Shown here in pieces: positions 259 to 53,752 of a stretch of 64,000 nt of DNA; positions within the stretch are counted from its first letter, which is position 1; each line of letters begins with the position of its first letter. The DNA lies in IMG/VR virus record IMGVR_UViG_3300035670_000008, positions 152,564-216,563 of that record; one strand, given 5' to 3'. The position numbers and the translations under genes are program-made. Below the pieces are notes generated by a model that was not told the origin of the DNA, did no database searches, and worked only from the letters and a program-made list of their open reading frames with translations.

Positions 259-3200
259 ATGGTAGATTACACGTTCCCTAACATTTCCTTTAACACCAGT
301 ATTATCGGCCCTGCACCGGCGCGTCCTGGTTGGCGCGACAAGTATGCCGTAATCGGTGAATTCAACCGCGGGCCTGTTGTCCCCGTTAACTCTTCTAACC
401 GCGCTGTATTAGCCTCTCTGTACGGAGAAGACACTAGCTCTGGGTCTATTGCCCTGCAGCAAGCGTTCCGTCAAGGTGCTACTAACGCGGTCGTTGCCCG
501 AGCTGTGCCGGATAGTTTGGCTAGCCAACTATACTTTGAGCTGTCTGGTCAAAGTACCTTCATCCAACCCAGCACCGGCTACGAAAGCTCTGTAGCTAAC
601 ACTGGTGTTCTAGACAGCTTCAACTCCACGACTGGGTTTAAGCTCACTCTAGACTACATCGGACGCCCCAAGTTTAACCGCACTAACTACGGTGGGGTTG
701 AGTCGAAGAACACACCGGTAGACCACCCCACTTTTGCGGGTCGTGCTCAAATGACCTATATGGTCACCCGTGTTCAGTCTGCTGACTCCGCCCAGCGTGT
801 TGTCTACGAAGACGATAACGAAGAACTTGAAATTACCCTACATAACAGCACTCGGGATGACTACCAACTCGTTACTTACGAAGAAGGTAACAACGAATAT
901 GTTGAGCAGTACATCAAGCCTGGTTTTACCATCCGCTCTTCCACCAGCGCTCAACAAGAAGGTTTAGTCATTGCGTCTAACCCGTTCACCTACGGCGAAG
1001 GTGTTAAAGCTGTTCTTGTTAAAGGACACTACAGCCCTGATGTTGCCTACACTGCTAACATCGTTTCTGCTAGCGGTCTTTACACCCTAACGGTTAGCGA
1101 CTTCCAGAAAGGTTCGGCTGCTGAGTCCCCCTCTCTGCCTATTCTGGCTGAAAGCGTTGCTTTAGTCGCTGGTACTGCTTACAAAGTAGATGCCACTGCT
1201 AGCAACGGGCCTAACATTGATGTGACGTTAGCCTCTAATGTTACCGCAGCTGCTAGCAGCGGTGCCCCTGTTTCTTTCGTCCCCCGCGTGAGCGCTGTTG
1301 CTCTCAACGGTGGTAATACCGAGATTACTTTAACAGGTGTGTTGGCTAACACCGATGTAGTCGTTGGCAGCAAAGTGAGCTTCTCCTCTAAAGAAAATGC
1401 TTACGAAGTAGCTACGATTCCGACTGTTTGGTCTAGTGGCAGTCAAGTAATCAGCATTACTGGTGATGTTCGCGCTACCGCTAAAGTGGGTGACTACGTG
1501 TTGGTGACCAGTGCTGACGCTACTGCGCAGATTGACACCTTCAAAGTTCACTTCCCCGCTAAAACCCAATACATCCTTGGCTACAACTTCCGTCCTTTGG
1601 ACAGCGGTTCTTTGGCTTCTAAGTTTGCAGACTACCGCTACTTCACGGTTGGCACTGCTTCCGCTCCAGTTCAATTCTACGATGGTTTCGTTAACTACCC
1701 TGTAGACAGCTATCTGGTTATCGAAGAAGGCAAAGGTGGGTCTTACCTCAAGATTCCTTACCAAACAGCTTTGGCTAACGTTCAAGAAGCTCAGCTTCTG
1801 AAGAGCGAGTACTTCGGCTTGGAGCTCCGCTTTGGTAAAGTTAACGATACTAAAGTCTACCTCGTCGAAAACAACATCTTCAACGTCTCGTTCGTTAAGA
1901 CCGAAGTGGTTGTTGGAGGTAAAGCTGGTTCTGAGACCGCTTACCCGAAAGGTACCGTCGGTACGACCATTCTCCGTGACCTGGAGTACGCCATCTACAG
2001 CGATGCCGCGTTCTCTTCGATGATTGCCGACGTGAAGACGGACATCTCCTTGGTGCCTTATAAGTTCACGGTTAACGCCGGTTTCGTTGGTGTAGACTCT
2101 AATCGTCTTCGCTGGAATCTAGAGCGCTATGTCGCTGGCCCTACAGGTGTGTTCTCTAGCAAAGCGTCTAACGTCGTTACCTTGGATGCTGTTCCCGATG
2201 TAGTATTAGCCAACCCGACCGACTACAAAGTCGTCATCGCTGATGTTGAGTACCCTGTAGCTAGCGCGACTTCTACTACGGTGACCTTAACTCTGACTGA
2301 CGTAGCGGTGCTGGATGCTTATGCCGCCGGCGACACTGTCCAGTTTGCGTCCCAGGAGCAAACCAAAGACATCCTCATCCGTCGTGGTACGACTGGTGAC
2401 TTTGATGTTACAGACTACGGAACGGATAAATTCTATGCCTTCACTGGCGGTCGGGATACTGCCTCCCACGCCTACGCCGATTTCTACGCCCTCAATGGTA
2501 AGTCCCTCCTCCGGGTGGTGGCTCTAAACCCTGGCGTCTACGGTAACAACCTGAAGGTCACGATTATCCCTGACCAAATCTCTGCCGACAGCGCCAAGTT
2601 CTATCTCCAAGTAGAAGACGTTAATCCTAACGTTACTTTGGGCGGGCCTAAAACCGAGCTGTGGTACCTCGACAACAAACAGGTTGATGCCAACACCGGG
2701 GTCTACCAAACAACCAAGGATTCCAACCTGATTCGCGCTTACTTCTTACCTGCGGTAGAGCCTATCAACATCACCAACCTCTTCAATATTATTGATGAAG
2801 GTTTGTTCAAAGCCCTGCCTCTCCGCATTGCACCTCCCTTGGAGTCTCAAGACAGCGTCTATGCCTCCGGGGCTACTAAAGTCAGCGCTCAAGGTTCTGC
2901 TTACATCAGCAGCGTTAAGCTGAGCGGCGGTACCGAGTTTGTTGACCCCGACCCCGCTGGTGCTGTGAAAGCTCGTAAAGATGGCTACCTAGCTGCCCTG
3001 CGCGCGATTGAGAAAGAAGATGTTGCTTGGGTGGTTATCGCTGGTATCTACTACGGCGACAACGACTACCGAGAAGTCTTTGAAGAACTCAAAGCTCAAT
3101 GCGAGCGTTCCACTACCCTGAACGGTCTCCGTCGTGGCGTAGTCAACCTCGCACCTAACGTGGCTCCCCGTCAAGCCTCTGTCCTGCGCGACCTTATCGC

Positions 3201-3846
3201 TAGCGATAAAATCGTTCAGGTGGCTGGCTCCATTCAAGGGGTTAACCTCAACGGTCAGGTTTACCAAAACCAAGGCTCGGCAGGTATCTACGTTGGACTT
3301 CGTTGCGCTCGTCCTCCTCATATTTCAACGCCGTCTACCTACGCTAGCGGGTCTGCTTACAACGTTACTTTCAGTAACATCAACAGCTCCCCCGATGTGT
3401 TAGATGCCTTCACCCGCGCCGGCACCGAAGTTATCTTCTATGATTCTGGTCTGAAGCTCTATAAGTTCTTGAACGGGGTTACCACCAGCAAAGACCCCAA
3501 CAAGAAATACGTCTGCGTCCTAGAAGTGTGGGATCAGATGAAGTCTGACCTGTACGACTACCTGCAGTGGGTGCGCTCTGAGCCTAACACCCGTGACCTG
3601 CAGCGGCGCGTATCTTCCTCTGTAGACGCTTACCTCCAAGATAAGTTCCGTAGCGACTGGTTCATCCGCATCGCTCCGACTATCTGCGGTCCTGAAAACA
3701 ATAGTGAAGCAGACATGATTCGCGGTCAGCTCAACATTACTGTTCGTGCGACGCCCACCTTCCCCGCTGACTTCATTAAAGTCAACGCGATTATGGATCT
3801 CTCCGAGACCTTCTCGCTCGACACCCAACCCATCAGTTCTTTCTAG
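259..3846 (+). CDS. Contractile tail sheath protein, enlarged (1195 aa)
   Basis: N-terminal sheath motif (AVIGEFNRGP...LYG...AFRQGATNAVVAR), central ALNPGVYGNNLKVTI, and sheath C-terminal domain (EPNT...ICGPENN...GQLNITVRATPTFPADFI); directly precedes a tube-like gene. Confidence 0.92.
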   Translation: MVDYTFPNISFNTSIIGPAPARPGWRDKYAVIGEFNRGPVVPVNSSNRAVLASLYGEDTSSGSIALQQAFRQGATNAVVARAVPDSLASQLYFELSGQSTFIQPSTGYESSVANTGVLDSFNSTTGFKLTLDYIGRPKFNRTNYGGVESKNTPVDHPTFAGRAQMTYMVTRVQSADSAQRVVYEDDNEELEITLHNSTRDDYQLVTYEEGNNEYVEQYIKPGFTIRSSTSAQQEGLVIASNPFTYGEGVKAVLVKGHYSPDVAYTANIVSASGLYTLTVSDFQKGSAAESPSLPILAESVALVAGTAYKVDATASNGPNIDVTLASNVTAAASSGAPVSFVPRVSAVALNGGNTEITLTGVLANTDVVVGSKVSFSSKENAYEVATIPTVWSSGSQVISITGDVRATAKVGDYVLVTSADATAQIDTFKVHFPAKTQYILGYNFRPLDSGSLASKFADYRYFTVGTASAPVQFYDGFVNYPVDSYLVIEEGKGGSYLKIPYQTALANVQEAQLLKSEYFGLELRFGKVNDTKVYLVENNIFNVSFVKTEVVVGGKAGSETAYPKGTVGTTILRDLEYAIYSDAAFSSMIADVKTDISLVPYKFTVNAGFVGVDSNRLRWNLERYVAGPTGVFSSKASNVVTLDAVPDVVLANPTDYKVVIADVEYPVASATSTTVTLTLTDVAVLDAYAAGDTVQFASQEQTKDILIRRGTTGDFDVTDYGTDKFYAFTGGRDTASHAYADFYALNGKSLLRVVALNPGVYGNNLKVTIIPDQISADSAKFYLQVEDVNPNVTLGGPKTELWYLDNKQVDANTGVYQTTKDSNLIRAYFLPAVEPINITNLFNIIDEGLFKALPLRIAPPLESQDSVYASGATKVSAQGSAYISSVKLSGGTEFVDPDPAGAVKARKDGYLAALRAIEKEDVAWVVIAGIYYGDNDYREVFEELKAQCERSTTLNGLRRGVVNLAPNVAPRQASVLRDLIASDKIVQVAGSIQGVNLNGQVYQNQGSAGIYVGLRCARPPHISTPSTYASGSAYNVTFSNINSSPDVLDAFTRAGTEVIFYDSGLKLYKFLNGVTTSKDPNKKYVCVLEVWDQMKSDLYDYLQWVRSEPNTRDLQRRVSSSVDAYLQDKFRSDWFIRIAPTICGPENNSEADMIRGQLNITVRATPTFPADFIKVNAIMDLSETFSLDTQPISSF

Positions 3847-3859
3847 AGCTTAATCTAGC

Positions 3860-3883
3860 GAGCGGTCGTAGCTACGACCGCTC
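3860..3883. repeat. Perfect 24-bp palindrome between sheath and tube genes
   Basis: GAGCGGTCGTAGCTACGACCGCTC equals its own reverse complement; no U-tract follows. Confidence 0.85.
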
Positions 3884-3918
3884 ATAGACATTTTCAGAAA
3901 TCTATGGAGTAAGAAGAT

Positions 3919-4686
3919 ATGCCTTCATTCATTACTAAAGCCGCTGTAAACAACGCGATTCTCGACCCTCTGCAGGGTTTTGACTGCGACGTATATATTC
4001 AAGACCAAGCTACTGGTAAACAGCTAGTTATCGGGCGTTTCACCAACTTCCAGTTCACGGTACGGAACACCACCGAGCCTTACATGGAGTTTAACCAACG
4101 GGTACCTCGTCTGCTGGATGGGGAGTTCCAATTTGGTTGGGTGCTAGAACGGGGTCTGATTGACGTCCGCTTCCTAGAAGATACCTTTGGTATGGTGTCT
4201 CTATCCCGGGAAATGCGTATCTCTCGTAGCCCCCGGTTCCAAATCACTGTGGAACTCAATGCCCCCGAGCTAGAGAACCCCAAAGAAGGTTCTGCCGACC
4301 AAAGCTCCCAAGAACTCCAAACCACTAGTGCTGTAACTAACCGGGTTACTCGGAAAGCCTCCGGTAAATACCGTCTGATTTACGCTAAAACAGACTCCTT
4401 TACCTTCGGCGCTATGGCTGGTCGGAACGTTATTGCTACCCGCTGGGAGGGCCTCTGTGAGGGTCTCTACTACAGTAACCAAGCCGATATCTGGCCTGGC
4501 GTTAACCTCGGCCCTGGCGTCGGTGTTAACTCCAACGGTGAGAAAAAGGTCATTACTGACGTTGAGCTTAAAGATCAGCCAGGCAGTAAAAAAGCGCCTA
4601 CTTGGGATGTCTTTGGTGCTCAAACAGGTGATGTAGCCATTGTAAACAATAGCAACCTAGGTCAAGAAGGAAATACCTTCGGCTAG
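3919..4686 (+). CDS. Tail tube protein
   Basis: Immediately after the sheath; tube-like pattern DPLQGF...IGRF...EPYMEFNQRVPRLLDGE...LERG. Confidence 0.8.
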   Translation: MPSFITKAAVNNAILDPLQGFDCDVYIQDQATGKQLVIGRFTNFQFTVRNTTEPYMEFNQRVPRLLDGEFQFGWVLERGLIDVRFLEDTFGMVSLSREMRISRSPRFQITVELNAPELENPKEGSADQSSQELQTTSAVTNRVTRKASGKYRLIYAKTDSFTFGAMAGRNVIATRWEGLCEGLYYSNQADIWPGVNLGPGVGVNSNGEKKVITDVELKDQPGSKKAPTWDVFGAQTGDVAIVNNSNLGQEGNTFG

Positions 4687-4705
4687 ACCCCCGATAAGAA
4701 GGATT

Positions 4706-4739
4706 GAACGCTCTATGCTAGAAATAGTATAGAGCGTTC
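4706..4739 (+). terminator. Long stem-loop after the tube gene (probable terminator or attenuator)
   Basis: GAACGCTCTATGCTA-GAAA-TAGTATAGAGCGTTC, a 15-bp stem with GNRA loop; U-tract is weak. Confidence 0.6.
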
Positions 4740-4756
4740 TACTATATAGAGGCCTT

Positions 4757-7700
4757 ATGTCCGAACGTGTCCAAGCTAAGCTAGAGCCAACTTTTGGGCT
4801 TGACCTTGGCGCCGCCTGCCATCAACAACAGCAAGCCCAATACCCAGTCTTTGTTGTTACCGACTTAGAGAACAAAATCATCTTCTCCAACGCAACGCTG
4901 TGGAAGCTGACGAAGGCGCGGACGAACATCAATCGCTATTGGCAGGCCAGCACAGCCTTCTTTCAATGCACAATCGAGCTGACGGACTTATCTCAACTCG
5001 TACCTTCCTGGCTAGCGCCTGGGTATAGACACCCCACCGTCGCGCGGACTAATATCCTGCCGTCACCTGAGAAGCCCGAAGAAGAAGAAGGAACGGAGGT
5101 GACGCCCACTCCAGTTACCCAACCTACACCTACTGGGTCGGGTACGATGCTGGGGTTTTATGAAGAAAGAAGAAAAGCTATAGCTGAGCTCCAGAGCGCT
5201 GGGGAGACCGCTGCCCCGTTAAAGGTAGAACCACATCCCGATGTACCTGAGGTTAAAGAGATTGTACAAACCCTCCAGGCTGAGTACTCGGCAGCTAATG
5301 GAGACTCAGCTAAGAAAGCCGCAGCGGCAACTAAGTACTACGGTGCCGTTCTAAAAGCCTACGACGCTGAGATTAGTAAGATTAAAGCGAATCAGCAGGG
5401 TACCGAAGCACCTACTTCTACTACGCCGGCTGCGTCCACTAATCAGTCAAGCACTTTGGTTCCTCCCATGAGCCAGAAAATAAAAGACGAGATTAGAAAA
5501 AATAAAGAGGAGTGGGATAGTAGAGTAGGTCCTGGTAAGGCGGTAGAGCTCTTTGATATAGAGGCCGTAAGAGAGGACATGCTTGCTAAAATAAGCCCGG
5601 AGTTAAAAGCGTATGGAGAGTCCCTACCCGACGTTGAACCTTACAAAAGTTTTACTTTTCTCGGAAAACTCTGGGAGGCACTTGAGTTATCAGAAGCAGG
5701 CGCTAGTGGCTCTCAACAGCAAACTAGCTCGATTCCATCCCAACAGGCTATTTCTGATGCTGTCGCTGAGTTTCCTCTAGCTCCCTACGATGAGATTTGC
5801 CTCTACGGTGGTTATCTAGACCGTCTCCGCGAGGCTACGACAACTGACATTGACCAGAACCGGCTGCTTCGCAAAGGCGTCTGGACAGTGGATACCATTA
5901 CCGTCAGTGGCAGTACCCCAACTGGGATTATCATTACGGTACAGTGCCGCGACCGGCTGAAGTATTTAATGGACACCTTCGGTAGCTACAATACCGCTGA
6001 GAGTTCAGAGTTCCTAACCCGAGACAGTAAGGAGTGGTATGCTTCAGCTAGAACTAATGTGATTCTAAACATCGCCCGCCGGGGCATAGGACATCTTACC
6101 TTTAATGGGCAAGAGCAGACCCTAGGGGGCCGGTTCATCCAGCAAGGGACTATTCTAGACATCCCTACAGCTGTAGATGGTCAGACTAGGATAGAAGGCT
6201 TTGACCCTTACTTCATGTATAAGAATGGAGAGACGTTATTTTTAGCGACGGGGTCACCTACAGCAAACCCAGATGGAAGCGCCTCGGTAACCACAGCAGG
6301 GCCCGCCGAATCCATTGACCTTAGTACTCCTGAAGGGGTGAAAAAGGCAGAGGAGAAGCTACAAGAGGTTAAGGAAAAAGCCCGCGCTCAATTAGAGACG
6401 ATTACTGACGAGGCTGAGAAAAAGGCAGCTCAAGAAGTCTTTGACCGAATAAACGCTTTACAGACAGGGCAAGACCTTCTTAATTACATAAAGAACTCCC
6501 CCAACCAGAATAGTGTCTTAGGCACTGATTTATCTAACAACCAGACGACTACTGCACAGCTCGGTGGCTCCCTGCGGGGCTCCGTAGTTAATGGCCCTCT
6601 GGCTAAAGAGATGAAGTTTAACATCGTTTCTGGCCGAGTTCCTTATGCAACAGGAGCAGACAGTTACTTCGGGTCGAACTTCATCGTAGCTGACCGGGTT
6701 CCTCTAGACTACATCAAGTTCTTATCACAACAGGAGCCCTGGCCAACGGAAGTGTTCCAAGACAGCCGCACTGGTGAGTTCTGGTACGCTCCTAGAGGAC
6801 TAGACCTCAGCGGGCTTTCAGACCGGAATCGGTTTTACCGGACATATTACTTCCGTAACTGGCCTAGTGATCTGGTGGCTAAGTCTGATGCCGCTCAGGC
6901 AAGTAAGAAAGCGTTGGCTGCCGTTCAAGCTCAAGGTGCCGAACTCGCTACCTACGACGATTTAATCAGTAAGATTACTAAGGCTTCAGCGGAGATAAAA
7001 CAATACGAGGACTGGCTTAACCAACCGTTTGGAGAAGACGCTGCTGAGATGACCCAACTCTACACCAACATGGGTAATATCATCTCAACCACTAAGTCCT
7101 TTGTTTATGAGAACAGTGTAGAAGACAGCGAACCCAGAAAGAAAATGGATCAGGCGGTTGCAGAGTGGATTGCATTAGCTCCTGTCCAAGATAAAGGCGT
7201 ATTTGTGTCTAAATCCCAAGCCATCCGAGGGATATTAACAGAACTACAAGACCTTTATAAACAAGAAGCCGAGGCACAAAGACAAACCGTTAGTGAACAA
7301 AAAAATGAGCTGACGGCGGCTACGGGGGCTGCTCCTGGTTTTACCAGCTCGGCTCCCCACCTAGCGCAGATGATTCATACCTTCCGGGAGGAAGTTTCTA
7401 ATGTGTCGGTACGAACTAATATCATCGTCCAAACCCACTCGCCTGCCTCTCCCGAAAACATCCAGCAGATTCTACATCTAACCGTTCAGCCTTGGTTTAT
7501 GCGGGGCAGGGCCTACCCAACTTCGTTCTTTACAGTGACAGACGACACCGCTGGGACTGTAGGGGGTGGGGGTAAGTCAGGTGCGTTGATTGCCTTGGCG
7601 ATGGCTTACGCCCGGGTTATTGCCAAGGAACTCCGCGTAGCCGCGGCAACTATCCTAGGAGATCCATCTTTCGTACCAGGGGAGGTCATCCAAGTTATTG

Positions 7701-46641: not shown

Positions 46642-47105
46642 ACTTTAGTCTTTGTCTTCTTAGTAGTAGCGCCGGCCATGAACTTAGCGGCTCGGTCAGA
46701 TATACCCAACTGCTCGGGAGTCAGATTACCTCTAGTAAGTGCGTCGGCAATGTTCTGCTCGCGGGGAATCCATTGCATACTCCAACTCTCGAAGCAACTA
46801 AGTAGGTCTTTTGCGTAGGTGAGGGCAATATACAGATGAGCTTGTTTGGTATTCCAGTCACCGTTGGTGCATTTAACCACTAAGTCGCTATCTCCGTAGA
46901 TTTCGATGTCTCGAACGCCATGCTCGATAGCTTTGGTTAGCCCTAGGATTAGCCCACCGAACTCAGCGCTGTTGTTGGTGCCTGTGCCCATGAACTGGGA
47001 GTATTCGTGTTTTGTATCGTCTGGGGTAATTAAGACAGCGCCCGCGGTGCAATGGCCCGGGTTACTCGGTGCGGCGCTGCCATCAAAGAATAGAATTGCT
47101 TTCAT
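46638..47105 (-). CDS. rnhA: Ribonuclease HI
   Basis: FFDGS...NPG, TNNSAEF, YGDSDLV, WIPREQN.AD, supplying the DEDD catalytic residues. Confidence 0.92.
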   Translation of the reverse strand: MKAILFFDGSAAPSNPGHCTAGAVLITPDDTKHEYSQFMGTGTNNSAEFGGLILGLTKAIEHGVRDIEIYGDSDLVVKCTNGDWNTKQAHLYIALTYAKDLLSCFESWSMQWIPREQNIADALTRGNLTPEQLGISDRAAKFMAGATTKKTKTKV

Positions 47106-47177: not shown

Positions 47178-48317
47178 TTAGGCTGTTTGTAGGATGTTGT
47201 CGAACTTAACTGGGATTTCATCGACGTGGCAGTCGTCTGCAATTAACGCTTTAATTCCTTTAGCTAAACCTTCAGCAGCTTCGACAGACTCAAATAGAAT
47301 CGCGTCGTCAATGTCTTGACTGAAACTCAGCTTTAACGACTTGTCTAAAGCTGTCTTGAGAACTTTGGCGTTAAGATACCAAGTTTTACTCTGACGGTCG
47401 CAGAGGATTGTGTGCCCGGTACGATTCACCTCGAAACTAGTTCCGTCGGCATTAGCGTACTGAGATAAGAAGTCTTTAAGTTGCTTAGCTTCGTTATAGG
47501 GCATCAAAAACCGTTTCTGCCAATCGTCATCAAACACAATGCCGCTATCTGTCATAGACATCCAGCTCCAGGATTGGTTCTTCACCCGAGCTACCGTGAA
47601 TTGAGATTGATTAAACGCTTTGGTCGGTAGTTTATCGTCAGCCGGTAAGCTCTCTACCTGCGTAGCGTTTAGCTCTGAGCCACCTTTGATTAGTCCAAAG
47701 TCATACCCTAACCGGGCGGCTAATGCTTTAACGCCGCTACGCATCTGGTTATCGGTTAAGTTTACAGACCCCCGCCGCCGCTTAGCTAGCTCTAACTGAA
47801 CGATCAAGTTCCACTCTTCACAGGTATAGTGTGGGTTCTTTTTCGGCGCTCCGTTTACAGCTCCAGTACTTAAGCATAAAGTAATGCCATAGAGACCTGT
47901 AGTTGTATAGTATTTGATCGGGCGCGACTCACCTTTTGAGCTAACCCAGATGGACTCAGCCAGGAAATCGTAGGCTTTGATTAGATCTTCTGGTAGGTAC
48001 CCGTAACCCTCTTCTATGGTTCCGGTGATATAGTCTTTGTACCGCTGGCAGACGGAGTTCACTCGCACTTGCAGAAGAGTGCTTACTTTTTTATCAGTCG
48101 ATAGACGCAAGCCTAATAGGTCTAACCACTCTGTTTTAGTGAAAGGCCCTTGTCCAGCAATAGTGGAGAGAGGGTCAATTTCTAAGTTTTTAACGGTAGT
48201 GTAGGTTAGCCGCAGCTGCTCTACAGTCATTTCATTTAGAGTAATTCCCTTTCTTCCTCTGTAGGGAATCCACTTAATCTGTCCGGTTAGTTCTTTTAAT
48301 TTTTCGATGGATAACAC
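47178..48317 (-). CDS. Hypothetical protein (379 aa)
   Basis: Long ORF with GTG start and AGGAGG Shine-Dalgarno just upstream. Confidence 0.75.
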   Translation of the reverse strand: MLSIEKLKELTGQIKWIPYRGRKGITLNEMTVEQLRLTYTTVKNLEIDPLSTIAGQGPFTKTEWLDLLGLRLSTDKKVSTLLQVRVNSVCQRYKDYITGTIEEGYGYLPEDLIKAYDFLAESIWVSSKGESRPIKYYTTTGLYGITLCLSTGAVNGAPKKNPHYTCEEWNLIVQLELAKRRRGSVNLTDNQMRSGVKALAARLGYDFGLIKGGSELNATQVESLPADDKLPTKAFNQSQFTVARVKNQSWSWMSMTDSGIVFDDDWQKRFLMPYNEAKQLKDFLSQYANADGTSFEVNRTGHTILCDRQSKTWYLNAKVLKTALDKSLKLSFSQDIDDAILFESVEAAEGLAKGIKALIADDCHVDEIPVKFDNILQTA

Positions 48318-48753: not shown

Positions 48754-49461
48754 TTAAAGGAACCGACCTTCAGTCGCCAGGGTTAATTGAGCGCCGTTAT
48801 AGTTGAGCCTAAATGGCAACGGCTTGTTTTCTAGCAGCGCGTAGACAACTTCATTAGTCATTAATGCACTGGCAAAGTTGGCGTTGATTAATTGAGGGCT
48901 GGACACGGCTTCGTAGCCGCAGCTACCACGGGGCTGGTCGCTAGGGCGCTCGTAGTTGGTAGCTACGTCAAAGGGGTGAACCGGACGAAGTTTACCCTCC
49001 ACGCGGGAGTACCATAAGCAGGTAGCAGTATGGAAGTCGTTACCTGGTAGGACGCAGGCGAAGTCCAATACTGGGTCGAGGTCGTCTAGGTCTTTGATAA
49101 CTTCGTTACGGGCGGACTCAGAGTCAACGGCTAAGACTACCAGCACCGCGCCGGGTTCGTCGCAGTGAGTAGTGTACTCTTCCAGCTGGGTACGGAACTT
49201 GTGCCGCCTTACGAAGTCTGGTACCGCGCTAATATTACAGACGGACTCCAGTCTTTTAGCAGCAGCGGCAGCTTTGTTTATACCTACGAAGGCAGGGTCG
49301 AATAATTGCCTTACACTATTAGACGATTCATACTCGTCGCCGTCATACACACAGACGTTCTTGGTGCCTTCCTTGTGATAGGCTAACAGCCGGACTAAAG
49401 GCTCTAATAGAATCGAACCGGTTCCACCGGCGCCGATGACATGACAGCTAGAAAATTTCAT
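48754..49461 (-). CDS. E1-like ThiF-family ubiquitin-activating enzyme (PRTRC-ThiF type)
   Basis: VIGAGGTG nucleotide-binding loop, YDGD.YESSN..RQ, G.NKA, AVD...AR, candidate catalytic GSC and QLINAN. Confidence 0.88.
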   Translation of the reverse strand: MKFSSCHVIGAGGTGSILLEPLVRLLAYHKEGTKNVCVYDGDEYESSNSVRQLFDPAFVGINKAAAAAKRLESVCNISAVPDFVRRHKFRTQLEEYTTHCDEPGAVLVVLAVDSESARNEVIKDLDDLDPVLDFACVLPGNDFHTATCLWYSRVEGKLRPVHPFDVATNYERPSDQPRGSCGYEAVSSPQLINANFASALMTNEVVYALLENKPLPFRLNYNGAQLTLATEGRFL

Positions 49462-50392
49462 TCTTGGCTCCTAAGATTTCAAATTTGGATTTAGTGGATA
49501 AGGTTTTTGAGTAAAGCACCAAGTCGCGGCAGGTCGTTAAGTACCCGCTGGGAGTTTTCTTTATCCAGCCGACCACGTAGGTTTTATCTGGTTTAGGCCG
49601 GTAGTGGTAACTTAAAGGGACTGTCTCGAACAGTTTCCCACGGTCAGCGACCACCATCGCTTGTGGTCTTTTGGTAGCGACTTTCAGAGTTAGGTCTGGA
49701 GCCCGGAAGGAAGTGGCTTCTTCTAGACTAAGGTGCGGCGGGGTGGGACTGGTTCGCTGGGCATACTCTTCATGGTCGTAGCTACTAAGTAGAAGTTCCG
49801 TGCTGCGGTCGTTTGTCCCCTGGGCCAGGTCTCGGTTAAAGTTGCTGGTGAAGAACGTATTGAACGCTTCCAGGTGGTCACGCGGCCGTTCTGCCCTACC
49901 CCAACAAATTTCACCATCGCGGTAAACGTTAGCTAACCGGTAGGGCACGTAGGTGCCGTCTTTGGTAACCGCAAATAGTTTCCAGCTTCCATGGTATATA
50001 GACATCAAAGACTTCGGAACGTGGATAGTCTTTGTGCCGTATAAGTGCTCTTCAACTGTGCATCCCAACCTGCATTTGTTGTCAAATACGCGGAGTGTGC
50101 CACCATCGCAAAGCTCACACTCGTCCATGAAGGCTCTCCTATGTGTCTGCAGTACGGAGAATTTGTAATCGGCCCGCTCGAAGCCAGTTGTCTTGATAAA
50201 CAACTTAGTAATGTCATCTATAGGTTTGTAATAGAAACAACCTTTGCAGGTCTCTTCAAACGAGTCTTGGCTGTTATAGCGGATGTCAATGCTGAAGGGG
50301 TCAAACAAGCAGGAGATTTTTATCCTGTTGCTTTTGTTGATACTAAGAATGGCCCCCGCCGCGATGGACGGGAACCGAAGCACTTTGAACAT
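49448..50392 (-). CDS. Prokaryotic E2 family D-like conjugating enzyme (copy 2)
   Basis: PYRLANVYRDGEICWG...FNTFFTSNFNRDL; Cys near 49905. Confidence 0.75.
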   Translation of the reverse strand: MFKVLRFPSIAAGAILSINKSNRIKISCLFDPFSIDIRYNSQDSFEETCKGCFYYKPIDDITKLFIKTTGFERADYKFSVLQTHRRAFMDECELCDGGTLRVFDNKCRLGCTVEEHLYGTKTIHVPKSLMSIYHGSWKLFAVTKDGTYVPYRLANVYRDGEICWGRAERPRDHLEAFNTFFTSNFNRDLAQGTNDRSTELLLSSYDHEEYAQRTSPTPPHLSLEEATSFRAPDLTLKVATKRPQAMVVADRGKLFETVPLSYHYRPKPDKTYVVGWIKKTPSGYLTTCRDLVLYSKTLSTKSKFEILGAKNEIF

Positions 50393-50393
50393 A

Positions 50394-51584
50394 TCAGTAT
50401 AGGCAGGTGTTGATGATGTCTTCAGCTACAGGCATATAGACGTTCAAGTCTAGCTTCTGTGCTAACAGCGCAGCTAGCAACTCTTGACCGCGGGGACAAG
50501 CCATTAGAGCGTCGGCGTAGATATCCAAGTTGGTTAGAATATCTTTCAGTGTTTCCTTCTCTTCACCGTTCAGGTCAACGGTTCGCTGGTCACGGAAGTT
50601 CTTGAACTCAACTTCGTGCTTGAGTTCATGTTTGATGTCCTTCTCGTAATCGCGGAACTTATTAGCCTGGTTGGTGTAGGTATAGTTCCCGTACCAGCCG
50701 GCATTGTAGTAGGTGTCGTCCCAATCATCCCACTCGTCGATACCATAGAGCTGGTCGCGGGGCATGAGGGTAACATTCTTCGGGCCTTTGTACTTGGTAA
50801 CCCAGGAGTTAGCGCCGACGCCACGATAAGAGTAAGCAGTAGCTCTGGTAACGTAGGTGCTGGCTAACGAAGAAATCTCTGCTACCTTGCTGTCGTAAAT
50901 AGTCATCACCTTGCATTTGTCGTTCGAGCCGACGGTGGCTACGCCATCCAGGTTTAACAACAAGTCAGGCCGGAAGATATACCGCTTTTTGTTTAAGACG
51001 ATGGAGCAGCAGATGTCGAACGAATGCGGGGTAATCATTCCGATGGTGCAGTGCATCCCCGGTACGCCCAGTTCGCCTTGGTCATCCCGCCCGCTCCAAA
51101 AGGCGCTCATTGAGTTGTGAGAATGGATCGACCCGGAATGACAGTAGCCTTCCGGTGGAAATACCGTGTATTCTTCCCCTGTAAATAAGTCGCAGCTGTG
51201 GGTCGTAACGGCGTCTACAGTGACGCTAGTCACCGACTGCATCGGCACGACGACTTTCCACTGGCTGGGGTCATCTACTCCGCGCAGCAGGCACACTTGC
51301 ACTTCGGTGCTCCCGACGACGTAGGCGGAGCCATTGGTCGACATGTAGCTACGGAAGAAGGTGACAATGCCCTGGAGTAAGTGGAAAGGTAGACGGTCGA
51401 ACTGTTCTTTTAGCCACATGTAATCGACTTCGGCGGGCTTGTCGACTCCTTTCGGGTCTTTGATAGGCACGTAGTATTCACCCCAGTAGTTACTCTTCTG
51501 GAGTTTGAAGCAGCCGTCCTTCGTCCGAATGAACGGGGCTTTCTCTGTTTCTTTCACCGGTGCGGTGGTTAATGTTTGAGTCAT
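50394..51584 (-). CDS. JAB/JAMM metalloisopeptidase (Prok-JAB/PRTRC-A type)
   Basis: TEV...VVVPMQSVT...GSIHSHNSMSAFWSGRDD (E...HxH-x7-S-x2-D). Confidence 0.88.
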   Translation of the reverse strand: MTQTLTTAPVKETEKAPFIRTKDGCFKLQKSNYWGEYYVPIKDPKGVDKPAEVDYMWLKEQFDRLPFHLLQGIVTFFRSYMSTNGSAYVVGSTEVQVCLLRGVDDPSQWKVVVPMQSVTSVTVDAVTTHSCDLFTGEEYTVFPPEGYCHSGSIHSHNSMSAFWSGRDDQGELGVPGMHCTIGMITPHSFDICCSIVLNKKRYIFRPDLLLNLDGVATVGSNDKCKVMTIYDSKVAEISSLASTYVTRATAYSYRGVGANSWVTKYKGPKNVTLMPRDQLYGIDEWDDWDDTYYNAGWYGNYTYTNQANKFRDYEKDIKHELKHEVEFKNFRDQRTVDLNGEEKETLKDILTNLDIYADALMACPRGQELLAALLAQKLDLNVYMPVAEDIINTCLY

Positions 51585-51600
51585 AGTTTAGTAGGCTCCG

Positions 51601-53166
51601 TTAGAAGGTTGCTAGTTGCTCTTGCTGCTCTTGCTGCTGCCGCTCTCTCATCAACTGTTTTAGTTCAGCCATGGTGAAATACCCCAGTCCGCTTACAGAG
51701 TTGATTTCATTAGCTTCTAGACCAGTCTCTTCTTGAATTAGTTGGCAGTACATCAAGGCCTGCTCTAAGATGTAATGCTGTTTTTCTCTTGACGACCATT
51801 CCTCAGATACTTCAGAGTCCACAGTTGGAACCTCAGCGGCTTCTAGTTTTTTCTGTAGCCGCTCCTGGATTTTGTCAGTCTTTGCTGCGTTTGCTTTAAG
51901 TTTGTTGAGGTCGATAACCTTTAGGTCACTCAACTTACCATCAGCTAAGAAACGAACCAATGCTTTCCCCGTTGAGTTATTCACTTTGTACACAAACGCC
52001 AGGCTGAAGCTAATGTAGTTTGTGAAAGAGAATCTAACAGAGCAGTCGTAGACTGGGTACGGTCGGAACTTTAAGGACATTTCGTTCTTTAAAGAGCCGG
52101 TTACAGGTAACAAAGGAGACTGGCACATCAATAGCCCAATTACGTCGTTGTCGGCGTAGTCACAGTCGTATGAGCCGTCGTAAAGAGTAAAGCCTTTTTC
52201 CAGGTGGTTTAGGAAACTCTCGTTGGCGGTGAAGCGGTAGTAGTGTTCGACCTTGGGGTGACGGTCGTCGTCGCTCGGGTTATACACCAAAGACGGGGTT
52301 CCTTCATCGTCGTCTTCGTCTTCGTACTCCCGGTTTTCGGAGTCGTACGGCGCGTACGAATCGTTGTACTCATGGGGAACCAAGTCGTAGTTGAAGGAGC
52401 TACTGAAGTAAGTAGCGTAGGCACCGCGGGGGTCGTAGGGACGTCCCTGCTCACCCCAGCAGACGTCTCCATCGCCGTATACGTTACCCAACAAGTAAGG
52501 TACCCCGATAGCTGTGACAGTCTTTACTTCTTGGTCGTTGAAGGTCTTTACTTTTTCCTCTATGTCCCGTATGGCGAAGACCTTAAAGTTACCACAACCA
52601 ACTTCTTCGGCGTTGATACGTCTTAAATCTACTGTGCTCTGCCACAGTAAGTTAGGTACTCTTAGATTCACGGCGGCAGAGAAGGTCTCTCCAGCCCGGC
52701 ATGGCTTACCATCTCTCAGGCTTTGCTCTTCTTCTATGCCGAGTAGGTGGCTATTCGACAGACCTGGGCAAGCGTTGGGTAACTTACGGAAGTATTCTTG
52801 GTAATAGGGGGTGAAGTCTACCCAACCCAACATTGCCCTGATTTGGTCTTCTTTTGAGCGGTTGAGCAGGTAAGTTCTGCGGGAATAGAAGCTGCCAGTT
52901 GTGCTGCGAAGGGTTCTATTAAAGAACGCTTCATCGTCGTTGAGTTTCTTTGTTAAATGGGTTTTGATGGCGTCCGCTGCTTTGCTACGAGCGTTCTGGC
53001 TGCACTGTCTACAGCGGTTTGCAGTGATATCACAGAGGAGTTCGTCGTCTAGCAGGATTTCTTTCTCTTCTGCTTCAGTGACGTTATAAACCACCAGCGA
53101 GCTGTTATTCGCTAGCACGTTAACAAAGACAGTCTTAGTGCCTTTCGGGAAATAGAAAACTTTCAT
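51601..53166 (-). CDS. Prokaryotic E2 family D-like conjugating enzyme (copy 1, 521 aa with extensions)
   Basis: PYLLGNVYGDGDVCWG...YATYFSSSFNYDL; Cys near 52460. Confidence 0.75.
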   Translation of the reverse strand: MKVFYFPKGTKTVFVNVLANNSSLVVYNVTEAEEKEILLDDELLCDITANRCRQCSQNARSKAADAIKTHLTKKLNDDEAFFNRTLRSTTGSFYSRRTYLLNRSKEDQIRAMLGWVDFTPYYQEYFRKLPNACPGLSNSHLLGIEEEQSLRDGKPCRAGETFSAAVNLRVPNLLWQSTVDLRRINAEEVGCGNFKVFAIRDIEEKVKTFNDQEVKTVTAIGVPYLLGNVYGDGDVCWGEQGRPYDPRGAYATYFSSSFNYDLVPHEYNDSYAPYDSENREYEDEDDDEGTPSLVYNPSDDDRHPKVEHYYRFTANESFLNHLEKGFTLYDGSYDCDYADNDVIGLLMCQSPLLPVTGSLKNEMSLKFRPYPVYDCSVRFSFTNYISFSLAFVYKVNNSTGKALVRFLADGKLSDLKVIDLNKLKANAAKTDKIQERLQKKLEAAEVPTVDSEVSEEWSSREKQHYILEQALMYCQLIQEETGLEANEINSVSGLGYFTMAELKQLMRERQQQEQQEQLATF

Positions 53167-53182
53167 AGTTTAGAAAGGAAGT

Positions 53183-53219
53183 AAAAAAAGAGAAGACCCC
53201 GCGTTAGCAGGGCCCTCTC
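53183..53219 (-). terminator. Intrinsic terminator between Ubl and the first E2 gene
   Basis: Minus strand GAGAGGGCCCTGC-TAAC-GCGGGGTCTTCTC followed by T7. Confidence 0.7.
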
Positions 53220-53239
53220 AGTAGTAACAACTCTTTTGA

Positions 53240-53584
53240 CTACGCGCCTTTGGTGTCCGCGCTGGCAGAGGCGGTGACTAGTTCACCCGGTTTGGGGACG
53301 TAGTCTTTGGAGACGTAGGTGGTCTGAATCTTGAAGTTCAGCCGGCTGACGTCGCTGACGCCAATGGAGCCACGGTACTCCTGCACGATTTGCTGCAGGG
53401 TTTTGGTGCCGTCCACCGTAGCCACGAACTCTTCGGTTCCGTAGCGGACGATGATTTGGGACTCAGGATTGAACTGCTCTTCAGTGAACTCACCTTCGTC
53501 GAAATCGGGCTCGAAGTCCGCGAAGAGTTCTTCTTCGGGAGCTTCGGTGGAGTTAACGGGAGCGTTGGTTTCGTAATCAGACAT
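53240..53584 (-). CDS. Ubiquitin-like (beta-grasp) modifier protein with acidic N-terminal extension
   Basis: Beta-grasp pattern IIVRYG...ATVDGTKTLQQIVQEY...LNFKI...YVPKPGELVT; C-terminus DTKG-A; first gene of an E2/JAB/E2/E1 operon; GAGGA Shine-Dalgarno. Confidence 0.75.
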   Translation of the reverse strand: MSDYETNAPVNSTEAPEEELFADFEPDFDEGEFTEEQFNPESQIIVRYGTEEFVATVDGTKTLQQIVQEYRGSIGVSDVSRLNFKIQTTYVSKDYVPKPGELVTASASADTKGA

Positions 53585-53752
53585 GGGAAATCCTCAATGT
53601 TGGTAATGGACAGAATGTTTCTAGCACTTCTAATGCTTAAGCTTCGGCAATAAAATTAGGGCATACAGTTATTGCATTCTTGTTTCTTCTTGCTTTCTAT
53701 TCGCTCTTTTCCGTGGCTTCGTGTGTAAGCTCTGAGAAACCCCAGAGAACTC

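What the first reader, a model, noticed from the sequence alone, without database searches (positions are those of the whole stretch)
53183..53584. Ubl has a masked C-terminal glycine, an acidic leader and its own terminator
Seen: the C-terminus is ...ADTKG-A, so one Ala caps the Gly; the first ~40 aa are strongly acidic with spaced Phe residues (EEELFADFEPDFDEGEFTEEQF); a hairpin plus T7 separates the Ubl gene from the enzymes. Known: JAB proteases mature Ubl precursors to expose Gly, and PRTRC-type Ubls end in TKG. Inference: the JAB gates activation, the modifier is made in excess over the enzymes as expected for a consumed tag, and the acidic tail may be the functional payload (nucleic-acid mimic or recruitment motif).
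Basis: partly seen in the sequence, partly recalled or inferred. Interest (0 to 1): 0.65.

Follow-up and report, generated by a model that had tools for sequence, protein, structure and literature searches.

The report
Phage ubiquitin-like tag with capped glycine
A large phage, probably of cyanobacteria, carries its own ubiquitin-like tagging kit, and its small tag protein has a capped C-terminal glycine, a conserved acidic tail and its own transcription terminator, in a rare family that has not been described.

Summary
All three observations hold. The 114-aa ORF (53584-53240, minus strand) ends ...SASADTKG-A. Its first 41 residues carry net charge -15, with no Lys or Arg and six aromatic residues. 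A 13-bp hairpin plus T7 follows it, 16 nt before the next ATG.

With a 12-sequence alignment it folds as a ubiquitin/SUMO-like beta-grasp. Only about a dozen relatives turned up among 15 billion proteins, all on large phage contigs. They keep D-[TS]-K-[G/A], followed by 0-4 variable residues (A, N, C, Y, VV, KENV), which is the pattern of a cleaved cap. All keep the acidic, aromatic leader. Eight of ten loci keep a hairpin plus T-run with unrelated stems.

The neighbouring JAB protease has an intact JAMM motif. It is predicted to bind the Ubl with the tail in its active site (ipSAE 0.68, best control 0.00). A short ThiF-type E1 and two cysteine-bearing E2-like proteins complete the cassette.

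The cassette is a distant relative of PRTRC but not a member: there is no PRTRC_C match, no ParB, and the enzymes score below the family cut-offs. Vibrio phage D69 has a parallel cassette with a triple-repeat precursor whose repeats end in TKG.

JAB "gating", the excess of modifier over enzymes and the leader as "payload" are plausible but untested.

The parts
53240..53584 (-). Ubl precursor gene: 114 aa plus TAG
   Evidence: ORF. The MSA-based AF2 model has pLDDT about 85 over residues 41-108 with a b-b-a-b-b-b order. Foldseek top hits are SUMO/Smt3 (target-normalised TM about 0.7) and bacterial BilA 8tyx_A. VIA-align gives Z 8-10 to ubiquitin-like folds.
53591..53595 (-). GAGGA Shine-Dalgarno, 6 nt before the Ubl ATG
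   Evidence: The next gene (521 aa) has no comparable motif; its upstream sequence is TTTCTAAACT-ATG.
53462..53584 (-). Acidic, aromatic leader (residues 1-41). The conserved core is residues 17-41, E-L-F-x-D-[FY]-E-P-x-F-D-x-G-x-F-T-E-E-x-F-N-P-E.
   Evidence: Net charge -15, no Lys or Arg, six aromatics; all 12 family members have an acidic leader with no Lys or Arg. The model gives low pLDDT here, so it is probably disordered.
53261..53461 (-). Beta-grasp domain (residues 42-108)
53246..53260 (-). Flexible tail A-D-T-K-G (residues 109-113). K112 is invariant; G113 is Gly in 10 of 12 relatives and Ala in 2.
   Evidence: Alignment A2. Tail residues 106-112 contact the JAB active-site residues in the predicted complex.
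53243..53245 (-). Cap codon GCG (Ala114) after the presumed activation Gly
   Evidence: This position is A, A, N, C, Y, N, N, KENV or VV in relatives, and absent in two.
53183..53219 (-). Intrinsic-terminator-like hairpin (53219-53190) plus T7 (53189-53183)
   Evidence: Hairpins with other stem sequences sit at the same place in L002-L006, L014 and L017.
51601..53166 (-). 521-aa E2-like protein: a four-Cys cluster (C52, C55, C133, C156), an E2-D-like core NVYGDGDVCWG (228-238, Cys236), and a variable C-terminal half
   Evidence: Alignment A5. Homologues carry precomputed Prok-E2_D hits. It is a paralogue of the 314-aa E2 over about 42 aa at 50% identity. It evolves fast: 31-33% identity in loci where the Ubl is 80-84% identical.
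50394..51584 (-). 396-aa JAB/JAMM metallopeptidase
   Evidence: Weak Prok-JAB and PRTRC_A hits. E94, H154, H156, S164 and D167 are invariant in five homologues. Predicted complex with the Ubl: ipSAE 0.68, best control 0.00.
49448..50392 (-). 314-aa Prok-E2_D-type E2 with motif NVYRDGEICWG (155-165) and N-terminal CxxC pairs
   Evidence: Pfam PF14460, 26.8 bits against a cut-off of 25. This gene is absent from L005 and L014.
48754..49461 (-). 235-aa ThiF-type E1 with GAGGTG loop at residues 10-15
   Evidence: Pfam ThiF 53.2 bits. The best NCBIfam model is PRTRC_ThiF, 61.7 bits against a cut-off of 144.75. The nearest plasmid homologues are PRTRC ThiF proteins at 26-31% identity.

Best explanation
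The ORF encodes the modifier of a phage-borne ubiquitin-like conjugation cassette (Ubl, large E2-like protein, JAB, E2, short E1).

Proposed sequence of events:
1. The Ubl is made as a precursor in which one residue (Ala114) blocks the carboxylate of Gly113.
2. The co-encoded JAMM peptidase grips the beta-grasp, threads the S-A-S-A-D-T-K-G tail into its zinc site and removes the cap. It probably also reverses conjugates.
3. The ThiF-type E1 adenylates Gly113.
4. The Ubl passes to the conserved Cys of the N-V-Y-x-D-G-x-[IV]-C-W-G motif in the E2-like proteins.
5. The fast-evolving 521-aa E2-like protein, with its four-Cys cluster and variable C-terminal half, most likely chooses the target.

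The Ubl gene has a strong ribosome-binding site and ends in a strong hairpin plus U-tract. There is no room for a promoter before the next ATG, so the enzyme genes are most simply reached by read-through. This would give much modifier and little enzyme.

The 41-residue polyanionic, lysine-free leader with fixed aromatic positions stays on the mature tag. It most likely acts as a short docking motif, and it would add a charge of -15 to whatever is tagged.

Shown by sequence or computation: the fold, the cap variability, the JAMM motif, the predicted JAB-Ubl interface, and conservation of the terminator and the leader. Inferred: cleavage, adenylation, thioester transfer, read-through, and the role of the leader.
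For: - Fold.
- Family alignment with an invariant K and a near-invariant G, followed by 0-4 variable residues.
- JAMM motif invariant.
- JAB(1-245) with Ubl(38-114): ipSAE 0.68 (runs 0.63, 0.68, 0.69), best of 3 controls 0.00. That mark was reached by 58 of 80 solved complexes and 2 of 110 mismatched pairs. Partner pLDDT was at least 84, and the runs agree in at least 57% of contacts. The interface includes tail residues 106-112 and JAB residues 96, 98, 151-154 and 166-167.
- Experimental precedent for a bacterial JAB DUB exposing the Ubl's C-terminal Gly: BilC on BilA (10.1101/2023.09.26.559546).
- E1 and E2 assignments.
- Synteny Ubl / E2-like / JAB / (E2) / E1 in L002, L003, L004, L005 and L014.
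- Terminator. A hairpin plus T-run with unrelated stem sequence occurs in 8 of 10 loci, and the next ATG lies within about 24 nt of the T-run (under 20 nt in five of the six) in the six syntenic loci, window included.
- No sigma-70-like promoter on the minus strand between 53166 and 53584.
- Strong SD for the Ubl and none for the 521-aa gene.
- In the sigma-adjacent subgroup the Ubl gene lies 5-7 kb from JAB-E2(-E1), so it is an independent transcription unit there too.
- Leader conserved in all 12 members, with no Lys or Arg.
- Independent parallel in Vibrio phage D69: three repeats each ending [KR]TGTKG plus a 5-aa tail, an acidic and Phe-rich linker before repeat 3, a terminator after the gene, then E2_D, JAB and ThiF genes.
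Against: - There is no direct evidence for cleavage, adenylation, conjugation or termination. No RNA run holds the sequence.
- One relative (P0011) has no cap, yet its phage still encodes the JAB, so cap removal cannot be the only role of the JAB.
- Two relatives have Ala in place of Gly (P0010 ends ..NSKA; P0013 ends ..DSKAVV).
- The Ubl has no sequence match to Pfam Prok_Ub, PRTRC_C, PHROGs, PADLOC or PDB. Its identification rests on a model built from a shallow 12-sequence alignment (mean pLDDT 71).
- The complex prediction used my own shallow alignments, and it may partly reflect what the model remembers of solved JAB-Ubl complexes.
- The target and the biological role are unknown.
Confidence: 0.68

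Rival explanations
1. The cap is incidental and the JAB is essentially a deconjugase. On this reading the extra residue is a tolerated, neutrally drifting appendix that is removed with no regulatory consequence, or by host peptidases. Activation is not 'gated'.
For: A cap-less member (P0011, ends ..DTKG) coexists with JAB, E2 and ThiF genes in L012. Cap length ranges from 0 to 4 residues. The predicted interface fits isopeptide cleavage as well as it fits precursor processing.
Against: Ten of twelve members carry at least one residue after the G/A position. Known E1 chemistry needs a free C-terminal carboxylate on the Gly (established knowledge), so the cap must come off before use whichever enzyme removes it.
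Confidence: 0.3
2. The hairpin is not a ratio-setting attenuator. It could be a full stop, with the enzyme genes driven by a phage-specific promoter inside the 3' end of the Ubl gene. Or it could be a 3' stabiliser, processing site or translational occluder of the 521-aa gene's start.
For: The phage encodes its own sigma-70-family factor, so its promoters may escape the consensus scan. In the sigma-adjacent subgroup the enzyme genes are separate transcription units anyway.
Against: Only 16 nt separate the T-run from the next ATG here, and at most about 24 nt (under 20 nt in four of five) in the five other syntenic loci. The stem sequence turns over while the hairpin-plus-T-run form is kept, as expected of a terminator. 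The same layout follows the Vibrio phage D69 poly-Ubl gene.
Confidence: 0.2
3. The cassette is a phage-carried defence or superinfection-exclusion system. Like bacterial Bil, it would tag a rival phage's structural protein rather than serve the phage's own takeover of its host.
For: The bacterial Ubl/E1/E2/JAB systems studied so far (Bil, type II CBASS) act in anti-phage defence. The 521-aa and 314-aa E2-like proteins evolve much faster than the Ubl and E1, as arms-race specificity factors would.
Against: There are no PADLOC hits beyond the generic E1 Rossmann fold. The Ubl family is kept down to about 30% identity in large phage contigs, often at a fixed position next to the phage sigma-factor gene. 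That looks like a lineage core function. The JAB was not found in 185,579 species genomes, so there is no bacterial reservoir in the collections searched.
Confidence: 0.2
4. The small protein is a ThiS/MoaD-like sulfur carrier for a thio-modification, using the E1 only, and not a protein modifier.
For: ThiF-family E1s with small beta-grasp partners are mostly sulfur-transfer pairs in bacteria (PMC1779556). The E1 also gives weak hits to ThiF and MoeB models.
Against: Two E2-like proteins with an invariant Cys motif and a JAB peptidase sit in the same operon. The tail has a single Gly preceded by Lys, not GG. No sulfurtransferase or rhodanese gene was seen in the cassette.
Confidence: 0.05

Closest known systems
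PRTRC cassette (ParB-related, ThiF-related cassette; NCBIfam TIGR03734-TIGR03742; operon class 6d of Iyer et al. 2006, PMC1779556)
   Same: It combines a small Ubl, a JAB (protein A), a Prok-E2_D-type E2 (protein B) and a short ThiF of about 240 aa. The E1's best model and nearest plasmid homologues are PRTRC ThiF. The Ubl tail ends in K-G, with or without extra residues. PRTRC_C examples end ..KTKG..AKG-NHA..VKG plus 64 aa, and ..ANG.
   Different: All enzyme scores are far below the family cut-offs: 61.7 against 144.75, 18.1 against 101.8, and 16.8 against 131.45. There is no PRTRC_C or Prok_Ub match, although the positive controls do match. There is no ParB anywhere in the phage, and no D, E or F proteins. 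The Ubl has a 41-aa acidic leader, there is an extra 521-aa E2-like protein, and the host replicon is a lytic-type large phage rather than a plasmid or ICE.
Bil (bacterial ISG15-like) BilABCD anti-phage systems
   Same: It has separate Ubl, E2, JAB and E1 genes. The JAB DUB pre-processes the Ubl to expose its C-terminal Gly and also cleaves conjugates. The model matches BilA by fold (8tyx_A target-normalised TM 0.69; 8tyz_B Z 8.1). Bil and Bub Ubls also carry diverse N-terminal extensions.
   Different: There is no sequence similarity to solved Bil proteins. The E1 is only 235 aa. The E2 is of the Prok-E2_D type with Zn-like Cys clusters. The system is encoded by a phage, not a bacterial defence island. 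The N-terminal extension is acidic and aromatic, a type not among those listed (N/G-rich, coiled-coil, DUF1508).
Eukaryotic ubiquitin/SUMO precursors
   Same: The fold is closest to SUMO/Smt3, which also has a disordered N-terminal tail. The active Gly is masked by one or a few variable residues removed by a protease. By my own recall, not tested here, polyubiquitin genes end in one extra residue and SUMO precursors in 2-11.
   Different: The tail has a single Gly preceded by Lys (D-T-K-G), not GG. The processing enzyme is predicted to be a JAMM metalloprotease rather than a Cys protease. There is no sequence relationship.
Vibrio phage D69 cassette (OZ195729.1, all genes annotated hypothetical)
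   Same: A large phage with the layout Ubl gene, terminator, then Prok-E2_D, Prok-JAB and ThiF-like genes. The Ubl repeats end in TGTKG, and the last is followed by a 5-aa tail. An acidic, Phe-spaced segment (DEDEFEDEDDFLEDEGDF) precedes the last repeat.
   Different: It is a 263-aa triple-repeat precursor rather than a single domain. It shows no significant profile match to this family. Its fold was not tested. It lacks a 521-aa-type E2-like protein.

Membership tests
Ubiquitin-like beta-grasp superfamily | b-b-a-b-b(-b) beta-grasp fold | tested here: met
   MSA-based AF2 model: pLDDT about 85 over residues 41-108. Foldseek E about 2.5e-4 to 1e-3 against SUMO, ubiquitin and BilA, target-normalised TM up to 0.71. 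VIA Z 8-10.5. Viral Ub-like hits.
Conjugatable Ubl modifier | Flexible C-terminal tail ending in, or processable to, a conserved Gly | tested here: met
   D-[TS]-K-G is kept in 10 of 12 members (Ala in 2), followed by 0-4 variable residues. The tail has low pLDDT.
Conjugatable Ubl modifier | Actual cleavage, adenylation and conjugation to targets | not testable with these tools
   Needs biochemistry. Only a predicted JAB-Ubl complex is available.
JAMM/MPN+ metallopeptidase | Motif E ... H-x-H-x(7)-S-x(2)-D | tested here: met
   E94 and H154SHNSMSAFWSGRD167 are invariant in five homologues. Pfam Prok-JAB scores only 14 bits against a cut-off of 25.
PRTRC system | PRTRC_C (TIGR03738) / Pfam Prok_Ub (PF14454) Ubl | tested here: not met
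   No hit at E <= 0.1 for the Ubl and none in the six-frame phage genome at E <= 1. True PRTRC_C controls score 31.8-107.6 bits (TIGR03738) and 41-96 bits (PF14454). hhalign probability below 1%.
PRTRC system | PRTRC ParB-family protein in the cassette | tested here: not met
   No TIGR03734 match in the whole 216.5-kb record at E <= 1.
PRTRC system | ThiF, protein A and protein B above the NCBIfam cut-offs | tested here: not met
   61.7 against 144.75, 18.1 against 101.8, and 16.8 against 131.45 bits. They are the best-hitting models, so the relationship is distant.
Bil (BilABCD) | Separate Ubl, E2, JAB and E1 genes in one locus | tested here: met
Bil (BilABCD) | Sequence homology of the components to Bil proteins | tested here: not met
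   Profile searches of the PDB, which holds Bil structures 8tyx and 8tyz, find nothing for the JAB or the Ubl, and only a Rossmann-region hit for the E1. PADLOC gives only generic E1-E2 hits. No Bil-specific HMM was available.
Intrinsic (Rho-independent) terminator | G+C-rich hairpin immediately followed by a U-tract on the coding strand | tested here: met
   The form is conserved in 8 of 10 loci.
Intrinsic (Rho-independent) terminator | Transcript 3' ends at the U-tract, with partial read-through | not testable with these tools
   No RNA runs hold this sequence.

The most novel reading that the evidence does not exclude
Large phages of cyanobacteria, and independently some Vibrio phages, run their own ubiquitin-like conjugation pathway. 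Its modifier would be a 'conjugatable polyanion': the lysine-free, -15-charged leader with aromatic anchors is covalently planted on host or rival-phage proteins. There it would switch off nucleic-acid binding or recruit a partner, for example in the transcription machinery, given the recurrent adjacency to the phage sigma-factor gene. That would be a virus-encoded offensive use of ubiquitin-type tagging in prokaryotes.
Probability: 0.15. Interest if true: 0.85.

Novelty: new variant of a known kind. Interest (0 to 1): 0.6.

Why it matters
The prokaryotic ubiquitin-like conjugation systems studied so far (type II CBASS, Bil, Bub) belong to the bacterium, and CBASS and Bil have been shown to act against phages. 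Here a complete Ubl / E1 / E2 / JAB set sits in phage genomes. Its modifier family matches no Pfam, NCBIfam, PHROGs or PADLOC model and no paper I could find.

The family shows three readable design features: a variable cap after the activation Gly, a conserved acidic and aromatic leader, and its own terminator.

A parallel cassette in culturable Vibrio phages makes the question 'what does a phage tag, and why?' open to experiment.

One practical point follows from standard trypsin specificity and was not tested here. Because the tail is ..T-K-G, trypsin would leave a single Gly remnant (+57.02 Da) on modified lysines. That mass equals the iodoacetamide adduct, so proteomics must avoid that reagent.

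Tried and rejected
- Megablast of the 5-kb cassette and tblastn of the Ubl against 50,697 phage records: no match.
- Pfam, NCBIfam, PHROGs and PADLOC scans of the Ubl: nothing meaningful. The EntFM and PhpK hits are far below cut-off and were dismissed.
- Single-sequence AF2: too poor to use (pLDDT 48). It was replaced by the MSA-based model.
- Four long hits of the exhaustive HMMER search (P0005, P0006, P0007, P0009) are repeat proteins that match only through summed weak repeats. I rejected them as false positives.
- hhalign of the family profile against PRTRC_C proteins and against the D69 poly-Ubl: not significant. Kinship with those is therefore claimed only from motifs and gene context.
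- PDB sequence searches for the Ubl and the JAB: nothing.
- JAB profile against IMG/VR: only the two contigs already known. Against one genome for each of 185,579 species: nothing.
- Search of the phage's six frames for the leader motif: one other hit, inside a 4,243-aa ORF, judged to be chance.
- Sequencing-run search: six DNA metagenome runs (subsurface, soil, freshwater) and no RNA. Read laying was not used because contigs cannot show transcript ends.
- ESM Atlas look-alikes of the 521-aa protein: scores at or below 0.84, so leads only. The Prok-E2_D clusters they point to are largely viral.
- The idea that the 95-aa protein in the D69 cassette is its Ubl was dropped after translation. The 263-aa protein fits instead.
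Full report
WHERE IT IS

The window is the last 64 kb of a 216.5-kb IMG/VR virus record that is estimated 96% complete and has 48.9% G+C. The finding is a minus-strand ORF at 53584-53240 encoding 114 aa. It heads a co-oriented gene row:
- Ubl, 53584-53240
- hairpin plus T7, 53219-53183
- 521-aa protein, 53166-51601
- 396-aa protein, 51584-50394
- 314-aa protein, 50392-49448
- 235-aa protein, 49461-48754

OBSERVATION

The protein ends ...S-A-S-A-D-T-K-G-A. Gly113 is at 53248-53246, Ala114 at 53245-53243 and TAG at 53242-53240.

Residues 1-41 have net charge -15, 37% Asp+Glu and no Lys or Arg. Aromatics sit at Y4, F21, F24, F28, F33 and F38. The remaining 73 residues are electrically neutral.

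The hairpin has 13 pairs, 8 of them G-C, with loop TAAC, and is followed directly by T7. The 76-nt stretch folded around it has MFE -27.6 kcal/mol, z = -3.9, and none of 200 shuffles folds as well. In the whole phage genome only 22 sites on both strands combine a hairpin of -14 kcal/mol or better with an immediate T5+ run. This site is the third strongest, and the only one on the minus strand between 46000 and 64000. The next ATG (53166) lies 16 nt after the T-run.

WHAT THE PROTEIN IS

No Pfam, NCBIfam, PHROGs or PADLOC model matches it, and no PDB sequence does either.

A word search found three close relatives at 80-96% identity. An exhaustive HMMER search of 1.84 billion cluster representatives added eight true distant relatives of 101-124 aa. 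Four long repeat proteins in that list are false positives. The family is therefore rare.

With the 12-sequence alignment, AlphaFold2 gives pLDDT of about 85 for residues 41-108, with strands 43-48 and 51-56, a helix at 63-74, and strands 82-86, 89-91 and 102-107, followed by a floppy tail.
- Foldseek's best PDB matches are SUMO/Smt3 (target-normalised TM up to 0.71), other ubiquitin-like proteins and bacterial BilA 8tyx_A.
- VIA-align gives Z 8-10.5 against ubiquitin-like folds, including 8tyz_B.
- The viral structure library returns ubiquitin and SUMO-like proteins.

The protein is a beta-grasp Ubl. That rests on a shallow alignment, but the answer is the same in three libraries.

THE C-TERMINUS

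Across the family K112 is invariant. Position 113 is Gly in 10 of 12 members and Ala in 2. What follows is A, A, N, C, Y, N, N, KENV, VV, or nothing in two members.

A fixed D-[TS]-K-G followed by unconstrained residues is what one expects of a cap that is cut off before use. Processing of a bacterial Ubl by its operon's JAB protease to expose the Gly has been shown for BilC and BilA (10.1101/2023.09.26.559546).

The neighbouring 396-aa protein has the full JAMM signature: E94 and H154-S-H156-x7-S164-x2-D167, invariant in five homologues down to 33% identity.

A complex prediction of JAB(1-245) with Ubl(38-114) scored ipSAE 0.68 (three runs: 0.63, 0.68, 0.69). The best of three controls scored 0.00. 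That mark was reached by 58 of 80 solved complexes and 2 of 110 mismatched pairs. Partner pLDDT was at least 84, and the runs agree in at least 57% of contacts. The confident interface includes Ubl residues 106-112 and JAB residues 96, 98, 151-154 and 166-167, which is the active-site region. This supports recognition. It cannot tell precursor cleavage from deconjugation, it used my own shallow alignments, and it may partly reflect the model's memory of solved JAB-Ubl complexes.

Against 'gating' as the JAB's sole purpose, the cap-less member P0011 sits in a phage contig that still has JAB, E2-like and ThiF genes (L012).

THE ENZYMES

The 235-aa protein is a ThiF-type E1 (Pfam ThiF 53 bits; GAGGTG at residues 10-15). 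Its best NCBIfam model is PRTRC_ThiF, at 61.7 bits against a cut-off of 144.75. Its nearest plasmid homologues are annotated PRTRC ThiF proteins at 26-31% identity.

The 314-aa protein passes the Pfam Prok-E2_D cut-off (26.8 against 25). It carries N-V-Y-R-D-G-E-I-C-W-G and CxxC pairs.

The 521-aa protein is a paralogue of the 314-aa protein over the same core, N-V-Y-G-D-G-D-V-C-W-G at 228-238. It has four invariant cysteines (C52, C55, C133, C156) and a poorly conserved C-terminal half.

The 521-aa protein evolves fast. In loci where the Ubl is 80-84% identical and the E1 is 77% (in L003, where the whole row is held), it is only 31-33% identical and the 314-aa E2 is 42%. That suits a specificity factor.

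L005 and L014 have only Ubl, large E2-like protein, JAB and E1, so that is the minimal set.

EXPRESSION ARCHITECTURE

A hairpin followed by a T-run sits after the Ubl stop in the window and in L002, L003, L004, L005, L006, L014 and L017, with unrelated stem sequences. L012 has a 17-bp hairpin with a weaker T-tract. L016 has none.

In the six syntenic loci, window included, the next ATG follows the T-run within about 24 nt (under 20 nt in five of them). No sigma-70-like promoter was found on the minus strand inside the Ubl gene. The Ubl has a GAGGA ribosome-binding site 6 nt before its ATG, while the 521-aa gene has none.

The simplest reading is a leaky terminator plus unequal translation starts, giving much modifier and little enzyme.

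In a second branch of the family (L006, L012, L017/L018 and the P0014 contig) the Ubl gene is a separate unit several kb from JAB-E2(-E1). That agrees with the Ubl being expressed independently.

No RNA data exist for this sequence. Termination and read-through remain inferred.

THE LEADER

All 12 members have an acidic leader of 24-53 residues with no Lys or Arg. A conserved core has the form aromatic-E-[EP]-[DEN]-[FW]-x-[DE], followed by a second [LF]-E-E-x-F-[ND]-P module next to strand 1.

Fixed aromatic positions in a disordered polyanion suggest a docking motif rather than bulk charge alone. The absence of lysine means the leader cannot itself be an acceptor site. Whether it binds the cassette's own enzymes, a host protein or nucleic-acid-binding surfaces is untested. 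I rank 'docking motif retained on the mature tag' first and 'DNA mimic' as a possibility.

AN INDEPENDENT PARALLEL

The E1 also hits Vibrio phages D69, D181 and D148. In D69, where all genes are annotated hypothetical, the region encodes:
- a 263-aa protein
- two small proteins
- a Prok-E2_D-like protein (20.5 bits)
- a Prok-JAB protein (35.5 bits; PRTRC_A 72 bits)
- a ThiF-like protein

.

The 263-aa protein is three repeats of about 60 aa, each ending [KR]-T-G-T-K-G. The last is followed by INYSK. The linker before repeat 3 reads ADEDEFEDEDDFLEDEGDFGNEE. Its gene is followed by a GC-rich hairpin plus U-run. There is no significant profile match to the window's family and I could not fold the protein, so I treat this as an analogous, possibly distantly related, system. 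It does independently tie together T-K-G ends, a need for endoproteolytic processing, an acidic and Phe-spaced segment ahead of a Ubl unit, and a terminator after the modifier gene.

COMPARISON WITH KNOWN SYSTEMS

The cassette works like a Bil- or PRTRC-type Ubl pathway.

It is not a PRTRC member. It has no PRTRC_C or Prok_Ub match, while true PRTRC_C controls do match. No ParB is present in the phage. The A, B and ThiF scores are far below the cut-offs.

Four examples end ..ANG..AKG-NHA..KTKG, and ..VKG followed by 64 more residues.

It is not a Bil member by sequence. Its E1 is much shorter. Its leader type is not among the N-terminal extensions catalogued for Bil and Bub Ubls.

Literature searches found no description of phage-encoded cassettes of this kind.

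HOST AND HABITAT

Relatives carry NblA and CpeT genes, which points to phages of cyanobacteria. The DNA occurs in subsurface, soil and freshwater metagenomes. The JAB was not found in one genome for each of 185,579 species.

VERDICT

This is a new, rare, phage-borne variant of a known kind of system. The biological target and the leader's job are the open and interesting parts.

Noticed in passing
L023 (Vibrio phage D69, OZ195729.1 record 169062-179478, reverse complement): 1394-2185, 3188-3877, 3893-4963, 5196-5951: A culturable 187-kb Vibrio phage carries a parallel cassette, all annotated hypothetical. A 263-aa triple-repeat protein has repeats ending [KR]TGTKG, a 5-aa tail, and an acidic, Phe-rich linker before repeat 3. 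It is followed by a terminator-like hairpin and then Prok-E2_D-like, Prok-JAB and ThiF-like genes. Phages D181 and D148 give the same E1 hit.
   Followed up: partly
L006 8001-10497; L012 8001-9461; L017 8001-10233; L018 6445-8677; P0014 contig (no DNA held): In the more distant branch of the Ubl family, the Ubl gene lies directly upstream of a phage sigma-70-family gene, or one gene upstream of it. JAB, E2 and E1 lie 5-7 kb away. The window's own phage has its sigma-70 gene elsewhere (G000:C1:85413-85622, locus L009). A functional link between the Ubl and the sigma factor is possible but was not tested.
   Followed up: partly
window 25810-46641 (+): A single 6,943-aa ORF converges on the RNase H gene, which together with a 379-aa ORF lies downstream of the E1. 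Its homologue in L003 (6,860 aa) has precomputed Peptidase_M23, VanY and DPBB_1 hits. It is probably a giant virion-associated, cell-wall-degrading protein.
   Followed up: no
window 53620-53700 (-), upstream of the Ubl gene: A purine-rich stretch (GAAAAGAGAAAAG..GCAAGAAGA) and a conserved block CTTATGaCCTAAgTxTATT lie 60-110 nt upstream of the ATG, and an ATTAGAAG box about 40 nt upstream. All are shared by the window, L002, L003 and L004 (alignment A4). This may be a phage-specific promoter; no sigma-70 consensus was found.
   Followed up: partly
window 51601-53166 (-) compared with 53240-53584 (-): Evolutionary rates inside one operon differ widely. Against L003 and L004 the Ubl is 80-84% identical, the E1 77% (L003 only), the JAB about 60%, the 314-aa E2 42% (L003 only) and the 521-aa E2-like protein 31-33%.
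   Followed up: partly
window 46638-47105 (-): An RNase H gene (Pfam RVT_3 and RNase_H) lies downstream of the cassette and is kept in L002 and L003. The 379-aa ORF between it and the E1 (47178-48317) has no family match and is present only in the closest relative, L002.
   Followed up: no
window 53167-53176 and 51585-51594 (-): The 521-aa gene and the JAB gene share the same unusual start context, CTAAACT-ATG, with no adjacent Shine-Dalgarno motif (the JAB has only a distant GGAG, 13 nt upstream). The E1 has AGGAG 6 nt upstream.
   Followed up: no
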